A stretch of DNA of 64,000 nucleotides. Source: Macrostomum hystrix. Taxonomy: Eukaryota; Animalia; Platyhelminthes. Under the pieces are notes generated by a model that saw only the letters and a program-made list of their open reading frames with translations, was not told the DNA's origin and ran no database searches. Both the position numbers and the translations under genes were made by a program. This document shows, piece after piece, positions 14,495-59,700 of this stretch (position 1 is its first letter; every line of letters begins with the position of its first letter). The stretch spans positions 1,612,001-1,676,000 of the forward strand of contig CATNEN010000031.1 in NCBI GenBank assembly GCA_950097015.1, read 5' to 3'.

Positions 14495-17400
14495 TCAGTC
14501 CAGTCGGCAGGTCAGCAGGTTGACCAAGCCAGCCCGGTACTGGCGAGAGAACACGAAGTAGATGACAGGATTAGTGGCACTGGGCAGCAGGTAGAGCAGG
14601 TAGATGGCCACTACTAGGACATCCAGGGACTGATTGAGCGCCGCAATCGCCGGATTAGAAAACAGAATCAGCACGTAGATTGTCTTCGGCAGCTTGCAGA
14701 GGAAGAACAGCAGCACGATGGCTATAAACATCTGCACCGTGCGCTTCCTGGCCTCCGCCGGGTTGCTCTGGCCAGCCGACTTGGCCGAAGATTTCTTCGG
14801 ATTGATCTTCGTGGTCTCGGTGGGCTGCGGCAGTTTGCGGTCCTTCAGATGCTGCTGCTGCTGCTGCTGCTGCTGCAAGTGTGTGAGTCCGGCTGTTCAG
14901 TCCATGGACTGGGGGGACGCCAGACCCACCTTCAATTAACCTAGCTAATTCTAGCACTCAGTTACCTATTTTTTTCAGTGAAGCTGGGAATCGAACCCCG
15001 ACCTTAAAGTAGTGAGTCAGACGCTCTAACCACTAGGCTACAACCCTCGATCACAAGAAAGCTCTCGATTTTTTGTGTCGCTTGTAACGTTGGATAGGTG
15101 CTCAAGTCGATGGAGAAGCGTTTGAGTCGCAGCTAACGAGGGTTTTTTAAAGGACCCTCCTAACCGTTTTTATGTGCATGATGCCTAAGCGAAATGGACA
15201 AAATTGCTAGTTGACGCCATACCTTTTCTGTGATCTCCTGCTGCTTCGCAGCTGGCACCGCCTCCTCAGCGCCGCCCTCAGACGTAGCCTCGCTGGTAAC
15301 AATGGTCGTCGTCGCTTCATCACCACCACCACCGCGGCTTCTACCGCCGCCGTCGTGACCACCGCCAGAGAACTTAATGCCGAACTGGTTGATGCTGCTC
15401 AGCAGGCGGGCGCTCACCCGGCCGTAGGCGAAGGCCATGATGAGGAACGGGATGACGTAGAGCAGGGCGACGCTGACACAGTAATAAATGAAGAAAAAGT
15501 CCTTCAGGCTGCTCGTCACCTGGCACATCCGGGAGACGCTTTCGTAGTTGAAAAAGTACAGGTTGGGCAGCGCGAAGAACACGGCGAACAGCCAGCAGCA
15601 GAGGCTGACCACCACGTACCAATGCTTCTTGCGGTGCTGCCGCTGTGTCAGGGGGTAGAGAATGGCCAAGTAGCGGTCGATGCTGATGATCAGCAGGATG
15701 CAGACGCTGCCGCTTAAGACGGTCACCTGCAGAACCTGCTGAAATTTGCACATGAACTGCCAGGCAGGGTGTGGAGGTGTTGCAGTTTCGATTTCTTTCA
15801 TTACGAAAGTCTAGATAGGTAGATAAATTTACGTAACCCAGTTGGGCGGGCTCTACAGCTAGAGGTAGGTCGCCACATTACCCGAATTTTACTTGGGGCT
15901 ACTTCTCGTAAGTGTCTATCTTAAACACACGAATTGTATCCCTTAAGCTGACGGGGTCAGTGGCAGAGCGGTTAACGCGTTTGTCTCTCTCACCTAGGTT
16001 CCTGGGCTCGAATCCGCGGCGAGGACACTTTAATTTGGGACGCAGAGAAGGCTTGGGGGCTTGTCGTGCAATTTACGCCGTTGAGGGCCAACCTCCAAGG
16101 CACAGTGAGAGTGTACACTGCCTGACGATGAGCAAGTCAGGGCAGATGTACACACCTGTGTGCCTGCGTACAGAATCTGTGTGCTTGTGTGCTCAGGAGT
16201 CAGCGAAACGAAGCAGAATCGCCTGATGACACCAATCGTTTAGTGTCATCAAATGATGTGCCATTGCCCGTAGCCTTGCTGCAATTTTTATTACTATTAT
16301 ATCTTTTAGAATGAAATTCGAACTCTCGACCTTTGAGTCCGAAGTCTCCTCCGAATCACTAACCAATAGGCCACAAGCGCAAGAGCTTAGAAATCATACA
16401 TAAAACGGAAGTACTAATATGTTGGCCAAGACTCACAGGTGCGTTGCTGTAGGCCGCACTGCTGGCCTGCAAGCTGCTCTCCAGGTAGGCTTGCACGCCG
16501 CTGAATACGCCGACACTGAAGTCGGCGACTGCCAGATTGATGATCAGGATGTTCGTGATGGATCGGCGCATTGTCTTGTTGGCCAGAATGACGCTGATCA
16601 CCGTGATGTTTCCTGTGCGGTTTTTCACCATGTTCCAGGGTTTTCTATCCAATTTGGTTTCAACCACAGATACTGAATACCCAATACTAAAAATACTAAA
16701 TACTAAATAAGGGTATTTAGTATCTGTGGTTTCAACAGCTTTCCAATTCTAGATCAAATGTTTGAGGGATTTGAGATCTGCTCACAGGAGGACAGAGGTT
16801 GGCTGACACCAGCTGACGGATCTGGGATCAGGTCACAGGAGGACAGAGGTTGGCTGACACCTGTGACAGAGGTCACAGGAGGACAGAGGTTGGCTGACAC
16901 CAGCTGACGGATCTGGGATCTGCTCACAGGAGGACAGAGGTTGGCTGACACCAGCTGACGGATCTGGGATCAGGTCACAGGAGGACAGAGGTTGGCTGAC
17001 ACCTGTGACAGAGGTCACAGGAGGACAGAGGTTGGCTGACACCAGCTGACGGATCTGGGATCTGCTCACAGGAGGACAGAGGTTGGCTGACACCAGCTGA
17101 CGGATCTGGGATCAGGTCACAGGAGGACAGAGGTTGGCTGACACCAGCTGACGGATCTGGGATCAGGTCACAGGAGGACAGAGGTTGGCTGACACTGGCT
17201 GAAGGATCTGGGATGCCCTGCTAAGTACATGTCAAACACTTTCATAGCTTGTCAACTCACCCAGCATGCAGCTAATGGACAGGAAGCAGTAGATGACAAT
17301 AATGGCAATCTCCCTGGCGCTGTCCATGTTGTAAGCCAAATTATTTCCGCCAGTATAATTGGCATAGGCGTCAGTTTTGGCGCAAGCCTTCACGTAGGCA

Positions 17401-46721: not shown

Positions 46722-47827
46722 ATGTCGAATTCTCCTCCGCCACTGAGCCTGCGCCCAAAGAAGGGCATCCTGAAATCTCGCAGTCATCATCACCGACTGT
46801 CGCAGCAGCTTCGTCCGGAGCATCAGCAGCAGCTGCAGATTCGACTTCAACAACAGCAGACTGCCAGTGCTGGTGGCGTTGAGGAGGCCGCGTCTGCACA
46901 AGCTGGTGGAGCAGCAGCTCACAAATTATTTCAGTGGGACGAGATGAACATCCTGGCTACCTATCATCCACCAGGTGCGTTGTTTGGGGTGACTGTCTAT
47001 CAGAGAGGACAGACAGAGTGATAAGGACTAACAACAAGAATAATAATAATTGCAGGAGGGCTGCGGGCAATGGCACATCATTTGGGGACATTAGACCCGC
47101 AGCCAGCGAGGAGGCAATTCTGCCCATTTTGCTGACTCCTGAGCACACGCACACCGATAATGTGCACAGGCACACGCTCACACAGGTGTGTACATCTGCC
47201 CTGACTTTCTCATCGTCAGGCAGTGCACACAGTGTCACAGTGCCTTGGAGGTTGGCTCTCAAGAGCGTAAATTGCACGACAAGCCCCCAAGCCTTCTCTC
47301 CGCGTCTGCGCTCCAAAATTGATGTGGCCTCGCCGCGGAATCGAGCTCAGGGACCTTGCTGCGAGATGGAAACACGTGACACCGCTCTGCCACCCACCCC
47401 CCTACCAGACAAGGACTACGGCCATATGAAGGTAGACGAAGCGCCAACTCCCTACGAATCAGCGCGTCCAACCGACGAGGACGATGAAGACGACGAAGGC
47501 AGCAAAGGCAGCTGCAGCGACCGTCGGGTGCGTCGCGCCAGCTTCGGCGACGCTATCCCAGCCGAAGAGCTGGCCTCTCGACTTCAGGCCGCAAAGTCGT
47601 CTGCCATCGAAGAGGCCACAGCGGCGCCGCCGCTGTCGCCGGTGCACGATCTGGACGCCGACGAGAGCGAACTGACCGCCGAGGAGCGAGAACGTCGCCG
47701 ACATTTCCGGTTGAAGCGGAAGCAGCACTACAATGAGTTTCAGGCCGCTCTGGTTGCTAGGCAACAGAGCCAGGACGAAGAGGATGCTGATGATGTCGGA
47801 GAATCTGTTCGGATGGAGTCTGGATAG
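46722..47827 (+). CDS. PPP1R2: Protein phosphatase 1 inhibitor-2, 223 aa
   Basis: Exons 46722-46974 and 47409-47827 join as HPP|DKDYGHMKVDEAPTPY. Motifs KKGILK, QWDEMNILATYHP, GSK3-site PTPY and KRKQHYNEF. Confidence 0.95.
47040..47402 (-). mobile_element. tRNA-derived SINE family 1, near full-length copy filling the PPP1R2 intron
   Basis: Reverse complement of the 15953-16301 element, including head (TGGCAGAGCGG ... GCTCGATTCCGCGGCGAGG) and (TTA)n tail. Confidence 0.85.
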
Positions 47828-49872: not shown

Positions 49873-50387
49873 ACTGTCTAACAGCTGATCGCATCTGTCT
49901 AACAGCTGATCGCATCTGTCTAACAGCTGATCGCATCTGTCTAACAGCTGATCGCATCTGTCTAACAGCTGATCGCATCTGTCTAACAGCTGATCACATC
50001 TGTCTAACAGCTGATCACATCTGTCCAACAGTTGATCGCATCTGTCTAACAGCTGATCGCATCTGTCTAACAGCTGATCGCATCTGTCTAACAGCTGATC
50101 ACATCTGTCCAACAGTTGATCGCATCTGTCTAACAGCTGATCGCATCTGTCTAACAGCTGATCGCATCTGTCCAACAGTTGATCGCATCTGTCTAACAGC
50201 TGATCGCATCTGTCTAACAGCTGATCGCATCTGTCTAACAGCTGCTCGCATCTGTCCAACAGCTGATCGCATCTGTCTAACAGCTGATGACATCTGTCTA
50301 ACAGCTGATCGCATCTGTCTAACAGCTGATCGCATCTGTCTAACAGCTGATCGCATCTGTCTAACAGCTGATGACATCTGTCTTACA
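49873..50387. repeat. Minisatellite, 21-bp unit CTGTCTAACAGCTGATCGCAT (downstream of Fat stop)
   Basis: About 24 copies, unit length constant. Confidence 0.95.
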
Positions 50388-50759
50388 GGTAGAAAATTTT
50401 GTCCCGCAAGTTCGCCAACTAAGATGGTGTTCTGATGTAAATCTGACGTTAATTAAACAGCAGTCAAATAAAACGCAAATTAAGCTAAAAAACTAAGTTA
50501 GAAAATGCACAAAAGCACACACACAAAAGTACAGATTACTAGGGCATACTAATTATAAACATCCAAAATAATGTGCGATTCAATCAGTTGGAGACACCGC
50601 GGGTTGGACACCATTCGACTGGGAAATTTATCCTACTATTGCCTTGCAGCTTGAAATCTGTATTTATAAACCTACACTACTATGATTAAGTAGCTAGAGT
50701 AGTTTCTGGACTTTTTATTGAAGGCTGCAAGTTCAACAGGGACTAAGAAACACTAACAA

Positions 50760-53700
50760 TCAAGCCAGAGTCTCATTGGGCGGCTGTCGTTTCTCCACCT
50801 GTACCTGTACCGGCGGAGTCTTGTCAGTCACGGTCGCCGCCAACGCTGCCGCGGAAGCTCCAGTTGTCCCAGACGTCGGCAGTGGTGGGCGCTCCTCCAT
50901 GACTGGCGTGGCGCTGCCGCCGGAGCCGATCTCGGTGCTGCCGGAGCCGCCACTGCCGCCGGTCTTCGTTGAGACGGTCGCCGTTCCGCCGGCTCCGCCG
51001 CTGCTGCTGGTGCCGCCGATGCCGCTACCGCCGCGGAATGTGGAAGTGGAGGTTGTCATCTGGTCGGACATGCCGCCGCCAGGCAGCAGGGCAGCCCTGG
51101 AGCTCTCCTCTTCGTCGGCCTCCTCGAGATCTTCGCGCGCTTCGTCAAAGTCGCAGGCGGAGCCGGCGTACTGCGGCAGGTAGGCGCCAGGATTGGCCAG
51201 CAGCATCCTCTGCAGGCTGGGCCGGCGGGGACCCACGCTGCCGCTGTAGCTGCCGCTGCAGTTGCTGCCAGCACCCAGAGACTCCGAGCTGCCCATCATG
51301 GCCATCATCATCATCTGCTGCTGCTGCTGCTGCTGCTGCATCATGCGGCCGCCGTGAACCGGCGTCGGCCGGAGCATCGGCTGCTGCTGCTGATAGTACT
51401 GCTGCTGCTGCTGAAGGTGATGCTGGCAGCGGCTGCTGTGGCTGTGAGCCGGTGATGCGGCCAGACTGGAGGCCTGGCTGGCTCCGGCGAGAGCGGCTGG
51501 AGCGGCGTAGACGCAGTAGGGGCTGTCCGGAATAACGTCTGGCGGGTTGTTCCAGTCGGAGGTGTCCCAGTGATAGCCTGTGTGTGTTTGTGTGTAATAT
51601 CGGTGGTGAATTATGGGTGAACTCGTTGAATAAGATCTCCTCAGTTGATTAGTAACAAATTTGAAATTAATAACAATTTTCGCGAGTCGGACCCCAGAGC
51701 AGACGCACACGCACACAGACGCCAAGCCCTATCTCGAGATACGAACCCGGGACCACTTCATTGGTGGTAAAGAGCCGCATGCTTTTAATTAACTTCATAT
51801 CAATATTAGCTCATGAATAAGATGACATACTACAGAATCGTATTACCATAATACGCTACAAAGAGCTATTATAGATCCGGAAACACACTAGACAGAAGCG
51901 GATAACACAATGAGCCAACGATACGGCCACAGGTCTAGCAGCAACAACGTTGAAAGCAACAAATACACTAGGAAATGTTTGTTACACATTAGTGTTCGAA
52001 GGCAACGTAAAACGGAAACAGCTAAAGCCGACACCGACAGGCAATAAATAATAATAGTATTAATAATACTAATAATTGACATTCTAAATCAAACCTAATT
52101 TTAAAACCGCATGCTTAATGTGTTTTAAAATAAGCTGTTTAATTAATCAGTTTAGTCCTTTTAGCGCGAGTTGCATAAAAAAATATGGAAAGGCGCTAAT
52201 GCTGTTGCATGCGCTTAGTTCTGTTAGTGACAGTAGCTAGCATCGGTTAGTGCAGTAGTATATGCACGCACTAGTCACCAATTAATAGTTAAAAATAAAG
52301 GAGGAAAAGCAGAACCGATAAAACCAACAAAACTTAATATTTACAAACAAATATTTAAATCTTAACAAACATTATTTAAAAATACTTTCAGTTACATAAA
52401 TAATTAAATAAGTTAATGTTAAACTTTCTTTGAAACAAAGCCAGTGTTAGCTTAACTGAGACTGGGCGGGGGGCAGTTTGTTAGTCGCGGTTGGTTGGTT
52501 TGGGTAGAAGGGCTCAAAGCTACCAACCTTGGCGGGAGGCATGGGAGCCGGCGGGTGACACGCTGCCACCAACAACACCAACACCCCCACTGAAGTGTTG
52601 CACCTCTGCAAGTATATATATGTATAATGCACATTGTTTTAAATGAATCTATAAATTAATTGTTCTTCATATGCACAATATCTAAAAAGCTTTAGTAGGG
52701 AGAAGGCATTAGAAATGGTCAGTAATATGTTCAAACTTACTGTTTCTATAAATATTAGACGCGTAGTTTTTTTTATTTTGTATTCGCGCCAAATTTTTTC
52801 TAATTTTAGTTTTTTGTTAACTAAAACTTTTATTATGTTTGGCGCGAAAACAAAAAAGCGGGAAAACTACTGGTAGTAGCTTAAATTGTTGAATATATAA
52901 AAAAACTGCGGAAAAGTAAGAAAATGTTTTTTAGTTTTTTAATGAACTTTTGTATCGAGAAAAAATTAGTAAAGTGGTCTACTTTAAGCAATGTCCAGCA
53001 TGAAATTTACTTTCTAAAAGCCTATAGATAAGATATTGTAATCAGTTGACTGTCTATTATAAAAAAACACACACACAAGTATTGTCGGCAAACAAGAAAT
53101 AAAAGCTTATCAGGAAAGACAGGCGGCATTCGCAGACAGTTTCTAAGAAAGTAAAAAATAAGTCAATAAAGAGTTCCAGTGAATAGTAGTGATTGTTTAA
53201 GACAGAGCTGAGGCGCCAGTTAAATTTTTTGATCGAGCATAAAATAAGAAACAATGGAAACCTAATAAATGATCTGCAGCTAATAGCGTCACACCTGAAA
53301 TCTAAATAATTAATGCAATTAATAATACGCCGCCAGCGAATTTTGCCTAGATGATTAAAACAAAGCAAAGAGTAATTAGCAACATCAGCAGCCAGCTCAC
53401 CCTGCTCGTCGATGATGTCACCCAGAGCGGAGCCGGCGCCCTGTCTTATGTAGAGCCGCTGGCCCCGATTGTGTAAGAAGGCCGGCTGCAGATGATGCTG
53501 ACTGTGATGATGATGCTGCTGCTGCTGCTGGCCGTGATTCGGGCGCCGGCTGATTGTGGCCGTGCAGCTGGGCGTGAGGCAGCGGGTGGGCGTGCCCGCC
53601 GTGTCCGAGTAGAAGCTGAACGGCCTCGGCGGGTGCGGCTTGTCGTAGGCGGCGTAGGAGGCCGCCGCAGCCGCAGCCGCCTCTGGCAGATTGTGCTCGC

Positions 53701-56700
53701 TGCTGTAGCAGTTCGGCACTGAGTGCCGCAGGTCCAGCTGGCGCTGGGGAATCATGCAGGTCTCGCCGCTGGCCAGGGTGACCAGGGCCATGGCCTCGGT
53801 GGGGTCGTGGCCGCCGGAGCAGTGTCGGTAGGTGCCGCTGCCGCTGGTTGAGCCGCCAGATTTTCCAGCCGCTGCGGCGGCGGCAGCTGCAGCTGCGGAC
53901 GACGAGCCGTGCCGATCCTTGGCGTGACGTCGACGAATTTCACCGCCGCCGCCACGCCGTCTGGAGCAGTATGAGACAACGAAGAAGATGGTGAGCGCCA
54001 GCAGCAGGATGATTGAGATGGAGCTGAGGATGGCGACGACTTCGTGGAAGCTGAGGCCCAACAGGGCGGAGCTGCCGCTGTCAACGCCGGGCACGTGGAA
54101 GGTCTCGCAGCTGCGGCCGCTGTAGCCTAACGAACAGTTGCAATAGTAGCTGCCGGGCAGGTTGACGCAGACGCCACGGCCGCCGCAGGGAGACCTGCTG
54201 GCAGCCGAAGACGAGCACTCGTCCACATCCTGGCCGCAGGTCGGTCCCTGGTAGCCGGTGCCGCCGCAGTGGCAGATGGCTCCACTGGGACTCTCTTCGC
54301 ACCTGGCGTTGTTCTCGCACGGATTGACATCGCGGCCGCAGTAGAGGCCGAATTCGCAGCGGGCGCCGGACAGGCCGGCCGGACAATCACAGGTGAAATG
54401 CCGGCCAGATTGGCGGCAGGTGGCGCCGTTGAGGCAGGGCGACTCGGCGCATGGCTCAGTGTTGATCTCGCATTGTCGGCCAATGAAGGGACTGGCGCAT
54501 TGGCACTGATAGCCGCCAGGAGTGTTGCTACAGACGCCGGCGTGTTGGCAGGGCGCCACGGCGCAGGCTGTGCCAAAGTAGGGCTCCGGACAGCCCGCAG
54601 TGACACCGTCGGTGCTGCTGGTTAGTGACACCTGGAAGGTATTTTAATAATAATAATTGCAGGAGGGCTGCGGGCCATGGCGCAGCATTTGGTGAAACTA
54701 GACCCGCAGCCAGCGAAGAGGCCATTCTGCCCACTTCGCTGACTCCTGAGCACAGATCCTGTACGCAGGCACACACTCACACAGGTGTGTACATCTGCCC
54801 TGACTTTCTCATCGTCAGGCAGTGTACACTCTTGCTGTGCCTTGGAGGTTGGCCATCAAGGGCATAAATTACACAAGCCCCCATGCCTTCTCCTCTCTGT
54901 ACCTGAGGCAGGTAGGCTGGCTGCTTCCGCTGCTGCTGCTGCTGCCGTTCGGACACTGGCAACGGCAGGCCGTTTAGCCGCATGTGTCCTAGGCAGCCAA
55001 CGTAGGCGCGTCCGGTTGATAGGCGCTTCTGGGTTGGCGCATCTGACCAGGGAATGGCGCGCAGGGTCGGCTCGATCGAGTCCACAAGAAGCTCCACCGT
55101 CCAGTTCTTCAGCGTCTTCTCTGAGCGGGCAACGCGACTGAATCGGAGATGGGATGGGAAGATTAGACGGGATCTGAGGATAATTAGAGACGGGATCAAA
55201 GGGCAATTAGAGACGGGATCTGAGGATAATTAGAGACCGGATCTGAGGATAAGTATAGACGGGATCAAAGGGCAATTAGAGACGATATCTGAGGATAATT
55301 ATTGGCGGGATCTGAGGATAATTAGAGACGGGATCAGAGGGCAATTAGAGACGGGATCTGAGGATAATTATAGGCGGGATCTGAGGATGATTAGAGACGG
55401 GAGTTGAAGGCTGAAGGAGAAGTACTTCGGCAAAGACTCACCCAGCTGCTTCCCGCATGACCCGAAGCCGCACTCCGTGCCATCGGCCGTCGTTCACAGG
55501 CCGGCGACTGGCTGCCCACGGTCGGGTCTGGACGCGGCCGTTTACCGCCGGGGCCACCTGTAGCGCGCCGTCCCGTCCGAGGCTGAGCACAATGTCTCGC
55601 AGCTGAGGCGCCTCAGGCGTCCAGTGGACAGCGAACACGGGTCCCGGCTGTGTCTGCAGGGTGCGCATGCGGAACTCCAGGTCGACAGCGAAGGACCGTC
55701 CGGCGACGTCGCCTGACGAGGAATCCGCCGTTGTTGCCGTCGACTCATTTAAAGACCAAGCGAGGCCACCAGCTCCTCGGAGGTGGATAACGCTGGCATT
55801 GACGACACAGTCGCCGCTGCCTCTGACGGTATCGTCGGCGCAGCCGGCGCCACCACCGCCAACGCTGGCGCCGGCGTCCTGCTCCAGGCAGATGTAGTGC
55901 CCGGTGGGCAGGTGGTGGCAGCGCTGGTCCGGGCGGCAGTTGCAGGCGGCCTGCTCAAGCATTGGTTGGCAATCGGAATATGTTAGCGAATAGCAATGAG
56001 CACACGCTAAACTACTCAAAGCTATACTCACCAAGCTCATCTGGCAGGTGGGCCCAGCGAACCCGTCTGCGCAGGCGCAGTAAGGCGCCAGCCGCACCCT
56101 TGGCGACAGGAAGCTGGCGTGGGCCGTCACTACGCGCAGATCGCTGCCTGGCAACGGCTCTGGCACCAGGTGGCACCGGCCGCCATTCAGGCAGGGACTG
56201 GCCGGACAGTCGGTCAGGAACGCAGCCGTCCGGCCCAGTTTGGCAGCTAGGTCGTCCAATGGGAGGCGCTGCAGTGCGGCCGGGCTGACGTAGGCACCTG
56301 CGCGAGAGTCGTAGACGGAGAGCAGCACTAGGAGGGGCTCATTGCGCGTCACAGGCTGGTTGGCAGCCCGGCGAATCCGCAACTGCTGCTGCTGCTGAAC
56401 TGTGACAATGTACACATTGTCCACTGGTAGGCCGAGAGCGGACGAAAAGTAATCCACAAGTCTGCAAGATCAAAATATTGGCACTATTAGGGCGAGTAAG
56501 AGGATGTAAGCCCGAGCACCGAGTGGTTGGAGCTTCCGATTCCTGATTGAGACGTTCGGAGTTCGAATCTCAGCCAAGAGAGGAAAACATTTTGTGTCCT
56601 TTAGCAATACGTGGACTCGAAGGCCGCCACTCCCACGCCACACCCACCTGAACTTCTTAAAGCTGGTTGAGCTGAAGCACTAGTGAATTTAAGTTACCCT

Positions 56701-59700
56701 TGGGGCTGAGATTCGAACTCCTGACCTCCAAACTAGTTGAACTACAAGCGGCACTCACTTGGCATCGAGTCTATTGTAAAAGAATGCGTAGGCGCTTTCA
56801 TTGGCAATCCGCAGCACAGCCGCACTGGACACCATCTCGTCAGTGACCAGGTTGACTCTCACTGCAATGTCCTGCTCAGACTCCAGGCCTTTGAATGCGG
56901 CCTTGACTCGCAGCCGGTAGGTGCCGTGAGGCAGGCTCTCCCTGGTCACAATGGAGCCCTCTTTGGTCAGCCGGAACAGGTCGTCGTGAGTCAGGAGGGT
57001 CAGCTGTACATCGGTGGGCCGATGATGCAACAGTTGCACGTTGCCAATGTGCACAGTTGGTTGCAGGCGGTAATAAAAATTAGAAGTCATGTTGACGGCT
57101 AAAATCTTTGGCGGCACTGAGTCTGCCTTCACTGTGCGAATCGTGACCGTGGTGTAGTTGCACCGGATCACATCCGCGCTGTCACACACCTGCGATTGTA
57201 AGCCGTCAAATGTTTGTTAAACTCTTCGAAATCACCGGCAATGAATGCGAATCGTAATGACCAATTTGAAGACTGAATAGAGGGTAATGACCGATTTGAA
57301 GACTGAATAGAGGGTAATGACCAATTTGAAGACTGAATAGAGGGTAATGAACAATTTGAAGACTGAATAGAGGGTAATGACCGATTTGAAGACTGAATAG
57401 AGGGTAATGACCGATTTGAAGACTGAATAGAGGGTAATGACCGATTTGAAGACTGAATAGAGTGTAATGACCGATTTGAAGACTGAATAGAGGGTAATGA
57501 CCGATTTGAAGACTGAATAGAGGGTAATGGCCGATTTGAAGACTGAATAGAGGGTAATGACCGATTTGAAGACTGAATAGAGGGTAATGACCGATTTGAA
57601 GAATGAATAGAGGGTAATGGCCGATTTGAAGACTGAATAGAGGGTAATGACCGATTTGAAGACTGAATAGAGGGTAATGGCCGATTTGAAGACTGAATAG
57701 AGGGTAATGACCGATTTGAAGACTGAATAGAGGACTACTCAAATACTAGATAGACGGAAATGACCAAACAAGGACATGATCAATGGTATGACAAATTAAA
57801 GACATAACCGATCAAACTGAAAATGCAAGGCTGGGAAATGACCCCAGCAAGTACAGGAGGTAGAGCAAACCTGGACTCTGAGCTTCTCAGTTCCCACCAT
57901 GTAGCCGCTACCCGGCTTAGCCCTGATGCGGCCGTTCATGATGCTGTAGCGCGGGTTGCCGTTCACAATGGACCAGCTGAATGGGGCGCCGTTCGGCGGC
58001 GCGTCACAATCCGTGACGCTGATCAAATTGCCATCGGCAGGCAGGAAGCCGCCAGTGTCCTGAGTTAAAAAAATTAGCGACTTGTTGAGACTAAATTCGC
58101 AACATGCTACTCACATTCGCATGTAAGTAAGATGGTAAACATTAAACAACTTTTTTGCAACAGAACAAGGGAAAAGTATAATATCTTAAGAGTACAGTGC
58201 AGATCTAAGGAAACAAAAAAATAAAAAGACAACAACAATAACAAACTATAAGTATCCAGTGCAATTTTTAAAGCAGAACAAGCTGGCTAGTAGATTTGGT
58301 GCAGAAAGCCCAAACTATATATAATGAGTGAAGTAGTTTATACATCTGACAACTATTGGATCAAAGTGCTCAGAGATAAAAATACTGATGCTGCTAGGTG
58401 CAGGAATTTTGTATTAAAAGTCTATATTGTATCTTAAAAATAAACAAGACATAATTGGGAATACATACATTCAAATATATTATCTGATTTAATTTTTGCT
58501 TCAAGTTAACTTTAACGAGCTAAAACTAACGGAAGTTAATAAAAACGGAAACTTTTTACTTCCACCCGTAGAAAGTAGCGCAGGCACCAAACCAAAAAGC
58601 ACTGGCACAACACAAAAATTAATGCATGGTTGAGTTGGCAGTTGCCAATATTTTTCTTACCATGTAGGGCTGCTGGCTGACATTTCCTCTGTCATCAATC
58701 TTAAATAAAAATAAATTGAGAGAAAATGATAGCATTGCAGGAATTTGGCAATTAAGCAGTTCAGATAGTCACTAATTGACACCTGCGATCTGATTTGTTC
58801 CGCTTCCATAGTTACAAACTTCAATTTTTTCATAACAAGGTAAACGGCGGGAGTAGCTAATACTAAGCTGACACAGTCAAATGATTCGTCATCTAATTAG
58901 TCAATACAAGCATTGAGCTTACATAAAAGTTTTTTTTACAGGAAACGCAAGACTAGATAAGGTTAGCTGTTTCTGCGCATGTTTAATCTGGTTTAAAAGT
59001 TTCTGAACAATCTGATAATAGCGCTATTTGTTGCGATAACAAACACACACAAACACACAGACACGCAAGGCTGCCGATGCTATTGAACAGTTCTTATCAC
59101 AATAAATTCTGCTACCAACTCTAGATACACGAGTACACGAGTCGTTTCATTGAGAACACTGGCCCCCGGTGAATGCAAAAATACAATATAAACTATCATT
59201 GTACCTAGCTGTAATAGATAAAATATGTTACAGACTTTCTATCATAAATGGATTAGAATAAAAATTGAAATTTGTTTGTTTTTACCTGTAAATTAACATG
59301 CCTGATGAAGGATCTACCTAATGAAAGATTTACGTAATGAAGGATCTACCTAATGAAGGATCTACCTAATGAAGGATCTACCTAATGAAGGATCAACCTA
59401 ATGAAGGATCTACCTAATGAAGGATCTACCTAATGAAGGATCTACCTAATGAAGGATCTACCTAATGAAGGATCTACCTAATGAAGGATCTATCTAATTC
59501 TATCTAATCTACCTAATGAAGGATCTATCTAATTCTATCTAATCTACCTAATGAAGGATCTATCTAATTCTATTTAATCTACCTAATGAAGGATCTTCCT
59601 AATTAAGGATCTACCTAATGAAGGATCTACCTAATGAAGGATCTACCTAATGAAGGATCTACCTAATGAAGGATCTATCTAATTCTATCTAATCTACCTA

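What the first reader, a model, noticed from the sequence alone, without database searches (positions are those of the whole stretch)
54632..54902. A Fat intron that is, end to end, a 5'-truncated SINE: candidate retroposon-made intron (SINE introner)
Seen: the 271-nt intron between the LamG and EGF exons begins with GT within about 8 nt of where homology to SINE family 1 starts. It ends about 13 nt after the SINE (ATT)n tail. Both junctions read CAG|GT (cctcag|gtaca ... ttccag|gtgtc), and the flanking exons join in frame. Known: insertion into an AG|GT site with target duplication can create a precisely spliced intron; described introners are mostly DNA transposons. Inference: a tRNA-SINE family may be creating introns here. 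Caveat: CAG|GT also occurs at other junctions in this window, so the 5-bp repeat alone is weak evidence.
Basis: partly seen in the sequence, partly recalled or inferred. Interest (0 to 1): 0.78.

Follow-up and report, generated by a model that had tools for sequence, protein, structure and literature searches.

The report
SINE insertion spliced as an intron
In the flatworm Macrostomum hystrix, one short intron of a giant Fat-like cadherin gene consists almost entirely of a truncated SINE, which most likely landed in a coding exon and is now spliced out; this is a known but rarely documented way to gain an intron.

Summary
The 271-nt minus-strand intron (54902..54632) is GT..AG and phase 0. From nt 11 to nt 258-267 it is a 5'-truncated copy (consensus 102-362, 89% identical) of a 362-nt SINE with at least 1,817 candidate copies in the genome. 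That genome is Macrostomum hystrix, not human. Only 8-10 nt at the 5' end and 13 nt at the 3' end are not plainly SINE.

The best reading (about 0.7) is a sense-strand insertion into a coding exon at a CAG|GT site. The duplicated target supplies donor and acceptor, so splicing restores the old reading frame.

Support:
- There is no room for an older intron.
- The 524-codon downstream frame is intact.
- The M. lignano ortholog is colinear across the junction.
- A second case I found (L038) has a perfect 16-bp duplication.

Caveats:
- The duplication here is statistically weak.
Gain versus an overwritten old intron is therefore unproven.
- The "tRNA" and "LamG" labels are only weakly supported.

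The scan had already noted at least seven similar SINE-made introns elsewhere in this genome. This is a new member of a known kind.

The parts
54903..55139 (-). Upstream coding exon (79 aa, end of a weakly LamG-like region), ending ...KQPAYLPQ in phase 0
   Evidence: Frame analysis. tblastn of the M. lignano ortholog P0154 gives 80% identity. Laminin_G_2 scores only 13.5 bits on the preceding exon.
54901..54914 (-). Left copy of the proposed target-site duplication, TACCTGCCTCAG|GT: the last 12 exon nt plus the GT of the donor
   Evidence: Read from the sequence. Similarity to the right copy is 11 of 12 with one 2-nt gap, which is not significant against nulls.
54632..54902 (-). The 271-nt intron, GTACAG...TTCCAG
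   Evidence: The junction is colinear with four M. lignano protein models.
54893..54900 (-). 8 nt (ACAGAGAG) of uncertain origin: filler added at insertion, or a decayed piece of SINE consensus about 94-101
   Evidence: Alignment to the consensus. BLAST homology starts only at intron nt 11.
54658..54892 (-). SINE body, consensus positions about 102-348, in the same orientation as the gene; the A/B-box head is missing
   Evidence: 88.9% identity to the consensus, 16 mismatches, 2 indels.
54642..54657 (-). SINE tail (ATT)4 followed by AAA; probable source of the branch point (inferred)
   Evidence: Sequence. The tail is shared by all family copies.
54630..54641 (-). Right copy of the proposed duplication, TACCTTCCAG|GT: the pyrimidine tract and acceptor AG plus the first 2 exon nt
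53402..54631 (-). Downstream coding exon: four EGF domains, a hydrophobic membrane-span-like segment and a cytoplasmic tail; the frame is open for 524 codons
   Evidence: Pfam EGF at 82 bits. ORF list. 86% identity to P0154 over 427 aa.
47039..47401 (-). Second copy of the same SINE family (full length), antisense inside the 434-nt PPP1R2 intron at 46975-47408
15953..16303 (+). Third, more diverged full-length copy of the family (78% identical to the intron), with no obvious coding context

Best explanation
A SINE RNA was copied into the chromosome by a LINE enzyme (target-primed reverse transcription). It went in on the sense strand, inside a coding exon of a Fat-like cadherin gene of Macrostomum hystrix. 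The insertion site read ...TACCTGCCTCAG|GTGTCACT.... The copy was cut short at its 5' end, at about consensus position 94-102.

The usual 10-16 bp target duplication put one CAG|GT on each side of the insert. The spliceosome uses the upstream copy as donor. It uses the downstream copy, now TACCTTCCAG, as pyrimidine tract and acceptor. The AT-rich SINE tail probably supplies the branch point. Splicing therefore removes exactly the insert plus one copy of the duplication and restores the original reading frame (...YLPQ|VSLTSS...).

Shown here: the SINE identity and its extent, the frame logic, the conserved downstream exon, and that this family makes such introns elsewhere in the genome. Inferred: the exon was uninterrupted before the insertion, the intron is actually spliced, and where the branch point lies.
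For: 1. The intron is SINE from nt 11 (possibly nt 3) to the tail. Only 8-10 nt and 13 nt are not SINE, and these sit where the duplication should be.
2. Family copies carry 10-16 bp duplications directly after the tail. Here 11 of 12 positions match, with one 2-nt gap, at exactly those places.
3. The other six introns of this gene in the window are about 300-1,900 nt and the species mean is 692 nt (PMC10468722). An old intron would have left sequence behind.
4. 5'-truncated copies are common in the family, for example L027 at position 93 and L004 at position 64.
5. The SINE copy has 6.5% substitutions and 2 indels in about 250 nt. The downstream frame nevertheless stays open for 524 codons and is 86% identical to M. 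lignano, so it is still expressed, which requires splicing.
6. Four M. lignano protein models read straight across the junction, NLPR|VSLTSG.
7. Independent case L038: a full-length antisense copy with a perfect 16-bp duplication CTCGCCAG|GTACTGTT. In-frame open frames of 77 and 338 codons flank it, and the second one carries a WS_DGAT domain.
Against: The duplication is imperfect. Once both sites are required to be CAGGT, it is no better than 7-36% of random pairs. CAG|GT at both ends occurs in 2 of 7 introns of this gene. No RNA evidence and no ortholog or allele without the intron could be examined, and there is no paralog in the genome to compare. The donor GTACAG is not close to the GTGAGT-type donors of neighbouring introns, although GTTTGC and GTTGGT also occur.
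Confidence: 0.7

Rival explanations
1. An older intron already stood at this codon boundary. The SINE landed inside it, and later deletions removed the SINE head and nearly all of the original intron, leaving a SINE-filled intron.
For: Most SINE copies sit in non-coding DNA or in ordinary introns. L016, for example, lies in a roughly 500-nt intron with non-SINE flanks. The PPP1R2 intron in this window keeps about 63 nt of non-SINE sequence. The repeat at the two junctions is no stronger than ordinary splice-site similarity.
Against: It needs an insertion within 13 nt of the acceptor, which would move the old branch point about 250-360 nt away. It also needs deletions that stop flush with both SINE ends, while the SINE body itself took only two small indels. 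Other introns of the gene are 300-1,900 nt. The same family demonstrably makes introns by exon insertion (L038).
Confidence: 0.22
2. The insertion is not spliced. The gene is broken here, or ends here, and the downstream EGF, membrane-span and tail exon is a dead remnant.
For: No RNA data were available. An unspliced read stops after 41 codons.
Against: The downstream frame is open for 524 codons and 86% identical to M. lignano, and two further conserved exons follow. The SINE of the same age has 6.5% substitutions and 2 indels per roughly 250 nt. A dead 1.2-kb exon would be expected to carry several frameshifts.
Confidence: 0.04
3. The family is a specialised introner that prefers or depends on AG|GT sites and spreads mainly as introns.
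For: CAGGT or ACCTG occurs in the duplications of 6 + 6 full-length copies, against 3 and 2 for two permuted control words. The scan noted at least seven similar introns.
Against: The excess is small (12 against 5). Of the 11 family copies among those 12 hits, only L038 plainly lies within coding sequence. Duplications of other copies show no common motif. Most of the 29 sampled copies have AT-rich, non-coding flanks.
Confidence: 0.1

Closest known systems
Introners: transposons that create introns on insertion (Micromonas, Aureococcus, dinoflagellates, fungi, tunicates; surveys in 10.1101/2022.06.06.494994 and PMC12130899)
   Same: The intron is a copy of a multi-copy mobile element. The splice sites come from the target duplication plus the element ends. 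Removal restores the reading frame. Non-LTR retrotransposon-derived introners are on record, at about 5% of classified families.
   Different: Most described families are DNA transposons (about 82%). Here the element is an ordinary abundant SINE, and most of its copies are not introns. The main text of PMC12130899 mentions no flatworm, and no supplementary files were held for it. Specialisation for AG|GT sites is not shown.
Single introns of transposon or retroposon origin, reported case by case (reviewed in PMC11282704; from my own memory, a retroposon-derived intron in a rice catalase gene, not checked here)
   Same: A one-off exon insertion that is tolerated because it is spliced out.
   Different: In this genome it recurs with the same family (L038, and the scan's earlier notes), so it is more than a singular event.
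Ordinary SINE insertion into an existing intron
   Same: Same element, same insertion mechanism, same duplication.
   Different: Such introns keep their own flanking sequence, as in L016 and PPP1R2. Here none is left.

Membership tests
SINE (non-autonomous, LINE-mobilised retroposon) | Short element present in many dispersed copies | tested here: met
   A 362-nt consensus and at least 1,817 candidate copies across many contigs.
SINE (non-autonomous, LINE-mobilised retroposon) | Simple-repeat 3' tail and variable target-site duplications of about 10-16 bp | tested here: met
   (TTA)n tail in all copies. Clear 10-16 bp duplications in L002, L006, L007, L012, L019, L020, L023, L028, L029 and others.
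SINE (non-autonomous, LINE-mobilised retroposon) | Head derived from a tRNA, with pol III A and B boxes | tested here: inconclusive
   The consensus shows A-box-like (TGGCAGAGCGG) and B-box-like (GTTCGATTCC) motifs. ARAGORN finds no tRNA in six full copies, and Rfam finds nothing at E up to 1.
Transposon-made intron (introner-type gain) | The intron is homologous to a mobile element over nearly its whole length | tested here: met
   Intron nt 11-258/267 of 271.
Transposon-made intron (introner-type gain) | A target-site duplication spans both splice sites, so that splicing restores the empty site | tested here: inconclusive
   CAG|GT on both sides and 11 of 12 matches with a 2-nt gap in the expected places, but p is about 0.07-0.36 against nulls. 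By contrast, L038 has a perfect 16 of 16.
Transposon-made intron (introner-type gain) | The intron is absent at the same site in orthologs or other alleles | not testable with these tools
No eukaryote DNA other than this genome was reachable, and there is no paralog in the genome. Only ortholog proteins were seen, and they are colinear.
Transposon-made intron (introner-type gain) | Splicing shown by RNA | not testable with these tools
   No RNA data. Indirect support only: an intact, conserved 524-codon downstream frame.
Transposon-made intron (introner-type gain) | Several introns made by the same family in one genome | tested here: met
   L038 found and checked here. The scan's notes list at least seven more; I did not check those.
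Fat-like cadherin | Many cadherin repeats followed by LamG and EGF modules, one membrane span and a cytoplasmic tail | tested here: inconclusive
   Cadherin at 120 and 72 bits and EGF at 82 bits are met. LamG scores only 13.5 bits. The membrane span was seen by eye only. One source names the M. lignano ortholog 'Cadherin-related tumor suppressor'. The N-terminal part of the gene lies outside the window.

The most novel reading that the evidence does not exclude
This SINE family, together with its unknown LINE partner, is a recurrent maker of introns in Macrostomum hystrix. It would then have produced dozens of new, precisely spliced introns in coding exons of a gene-dense bilaterian genome. 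That would be a retroposon-type introner system in a flatworm, with gains datable by SINE divergence and testable against M. lignano and M. cliftonense.
Probability: 0.4. Interest if true: 0.7.

Novelty: new member of a known kind. Interest (0 to 1): 0.45.

Why it matters
How new spliceosomal introns arise in animals is still documented by few clean cases, and most known intron-making elements are DNA transposons in protists and fungi. This flatworm has a contiguous assembly and two sequenced congeners. If an ordinary SINE repeatedly becomes an intron there, intron gain could be studied directly: which target sites allow immediate splicing, how the duplicated site and the tail are reshaped into an acceptor, and how fast it happens. 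This locus alone adds one more probable case.

Tried and rejected
- **Ortholog DNA.** The look-up of encoding contigs for the M. lignano ortholog was closed, so the intron-presence test could not be done.
- **Unspliced fragments from relatives.** A protein word search with the downstream exon, aimed at ORF fragments that might span the junction, found none. A region search with P0154 returned only M. lignano models and unrelated EGF proteins, and no M. hystrix model.
- **Paralog in the genome.** There is none.
- **Significance of the extended duplication.** It is not significant once CAGGT is required at both sites. I therefore do not use it as main evidence.
- **tRNA identity of the head.** Neither ARAGORN nor Rfam confirms it.
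- **Enrichment of CAGGT or ACCTG in duplications of full-length copies.** 12 hits against 5 for controls, too few to conclude.
- **Coding-flank screen of 29 sampled copies.** No further intron-filling copy was found.
- **Supplements of PMC12130899.** None are held.

Full report
**Where and what.** The window is contig C31:1,612,001-1,676,000 of a 220,453,370-bp assembly in 42 contigs. Those figures are exactly those published for Macrostomum hystrix (PMC10468722, Table 1). It is a free-living flatworm and not human. The gene lies on the minus strand. It encodes cadherin repeats (120 and 72 bits), four EGF domains (82 bits), a hydrophobic segment and a cytoplasmic tail. Its closest relatives are four M. 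lignano models at 91% identity, one of which a source names 'Cadherin-related tumor suppressor'. The 'LamG' label is weak: Laminin_G_2 scores 13.5 bits against a cut-off of 22.9.

**Check of the observation.**
- The intron runs from 54902 to 54632. It is 271 nt long, starts GTACAG and ends TTCCAG.
- The upstream exon ends in phase 0 with ...AYLPQ and the next exon starts VSLTSS....
- The 271 nt change the frame by one, and an unspliced read stops after 41 codons.
- All four M. lignano models read ...NLPR|VSLTSG... with no gap at the junction, which supports the predicted splice sites.
- BLAST finds two further copies of the intron's sequence in the window (47039-47298 minus strand, 16045-16305 plus strand). 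It finds at least 1,817 candidates genome-wide, and the best 40 are 86-89% identical over intron nt 11 to 256-267.

**The element.** A consensus from 29 copies is 362 nt long. It has three parts:
- a head with A-box-like and B-box-like motifs;
- a body that includes a TG-rich stretch;
- a (TTA)n tail.

Full copies carry clear 10-16 bp target duplications of unrelated sequence, the mark of LINE-driven retroposition. ARAGORN and Rfam do not recognise the head as a tRNA, so 'tRNA-SINE' remains a resemblance.

The intron copy aligns to consensus 102-362 at 88.9%, with 16 mismatches and 2 indels. It lies in the same orientation as the gene and has no head. Other 5'-truncated copies exist, for example L027 from position 93 and L004 from position 64. 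The copy is somewhat older than the best-matching copies, which are 92-97.5% identical to the consensus. That sample is biased towards copies close to the consensus.

**What is left over.**
- Between the donor GT and the first BLAST-detectable SINE base lie 8 nt, which may themselves be decayed SINE.
- After the tail come AAA and then TACCTTCCAG.
- The last 12 exon nt plus GT read TACCTGCCTCAG|GT, and the end of the intron plus the next exon reads TACCTTCCAG|GT. That is 11 matches of 12 with one 2-nt gap, at exactly the two places where a 14-bp duplication of this family should lie.

I tested this similarity against random pairs of CAGGT sites and pyrimidine-rich acceptor-like sites. It is not significant, with p about 0.07-0.36 depending on the null. 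In addition, 2 of the 7 introns of this gene in the window have CAG|GT at both ends.

**Why exon insertion is still the best reading.**
- The gene's other introns in the window are about 300-1,900 nt and the species mean is 692 nt.
- If an old intron had received the SINE, the insertion would have to lie within 13 nt of the acceptor, which cuts the acceptor off from its branch point. Later deletions would also have to end flush with both ends of the SINE, while the SINE body took only two small indels.
- Exon insertion needs only one event plus immediate splicing at the duplicated CAG|GT.
- The downstream frame is open for 524 codons, is 86% identical to M. lignano, and is followed by further conserved exons. 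It therefore stayed under selection after the insertion, which requires that the 271 nt are removed.

**Does this family really do this?**
- I searched the genome for full-length copies whose two flanks both carry CAGGT (sense) or ACCTG (antisense). This gave 6 and 6 hits, against 3 and 2 for two permuted control words. The excess is small and not convincing.
- One hit is decisive as proof of principle: L038 (contig C3:15,384,892-15,385,264). It is a full-length antisense copy with a perfect 16-bp duplication CTCGCCAG|GTACTGTT.
  - The intron consists of nothing but the SINE and one copy of the duplication.
  - The flanking frames of 77 and 338 codons join in frame.
  - The empty site reads as continuous codons.
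  - The downstream frame carries a WS_DGAT catalytic domain (28.1 bits, cut-off 23.6) and has no start codon of its own near its beginning.
- Most sampled copies lie in AT-rich non-coding DNA or in ordinary introns such as L016. The family is therefore a normal SINE that is sometimes spliced out, not a specialised introner.

**Earlier notes of the scan.** The notebook of this scan lists at least seven other SINE-made introns in this genome and a SINE-filled PPP1R2 intron in this window. I did not verify those, except that I read the PPP1R2 intron and confirmed the species lead from the published assembly statistics. They are leads and not evidence, but they agree with L038.

**Comparison with the literature.** Transposon-made introns are well described. 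In the largest survey about 82% of classified families are DNA transposons and about 5% are non-LTR retrotransposons, and its main text mentions no flatworm (PMC12130899). Single retroposon-derived introns are mentioned in reviews (PMC11282704). This locus is a new member of a known kind.

**Limits.**
- No RNA data were available.

**Confidence.**
- Exon insertion that made a new intron: 0.70.
- Old intron overwritten by the SINE: 0.22.
- Not spliced, or a broken gene: 0.04.
- Something else: the small remainder.
- Whether the family is a specialised introner is a separate question about the family, which I rate at 0.10.

Noticed in passing
L038:1503-1870 (minus strand) = G000:C3:15384892-15385264: A full-length antisense copy of the same SINE family with a perfect 16-bp target duplication CTCGCCAG|GTACTGTT. 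It sits inside a continuous reading frame (77 + 338 codons, WS_DGAT domain downstream). This is a clean SINE-made intron with no other sequence in it.
   Followed up: yes
window 46975-47408 (plus-strand gene): The PPP1R2-like gene's intron, between ...ILATYHPP and DKDYGHMK..., is 434 nt, of which about 363 nt are a full-length antisense SINE. A possible duplication (CAGACA..AAGGACTA against CAGACAAGGACTA) spans the acceptor, but about 63 nt of non-SINE sequence remain at the 5' end. Its origin is less clear than for the Fat intron.
   Followed up: partly
window 55164-55402 and 57254-57733: Two neighbouring introns of the same gene are filled with minisatellites: period 23/69 with 10.3 copies, and period 30 with 16 copies at 96% match. 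The second creates a spurious 178-codon open frame.
   Followed up: partly
window 49874-50388: A 21-bp minisatellite with 24.5 copies at 94% match lies just downstream of the cadherin gene's last exon. It gives long spurious open frames on the minus strand.
   Followed up: no
L003:1501-1787 and L017:1501-1787: Two copies start at consensus position 74 behind a different, shorter head-like sequence (…GGCAGAGCGGTTAACA). They are followed by a second partial copy, which suggests a subfamily or a tandem dimer rather than simple truncation.
   Followed up: no
P0001 against P0154 (M. lignano): The M. lignano gene copies differ in the length of the glutamine run just before the junction (4 against 8 Q). 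This is consistent with the duplicated genome of that species.
   Followed up: no
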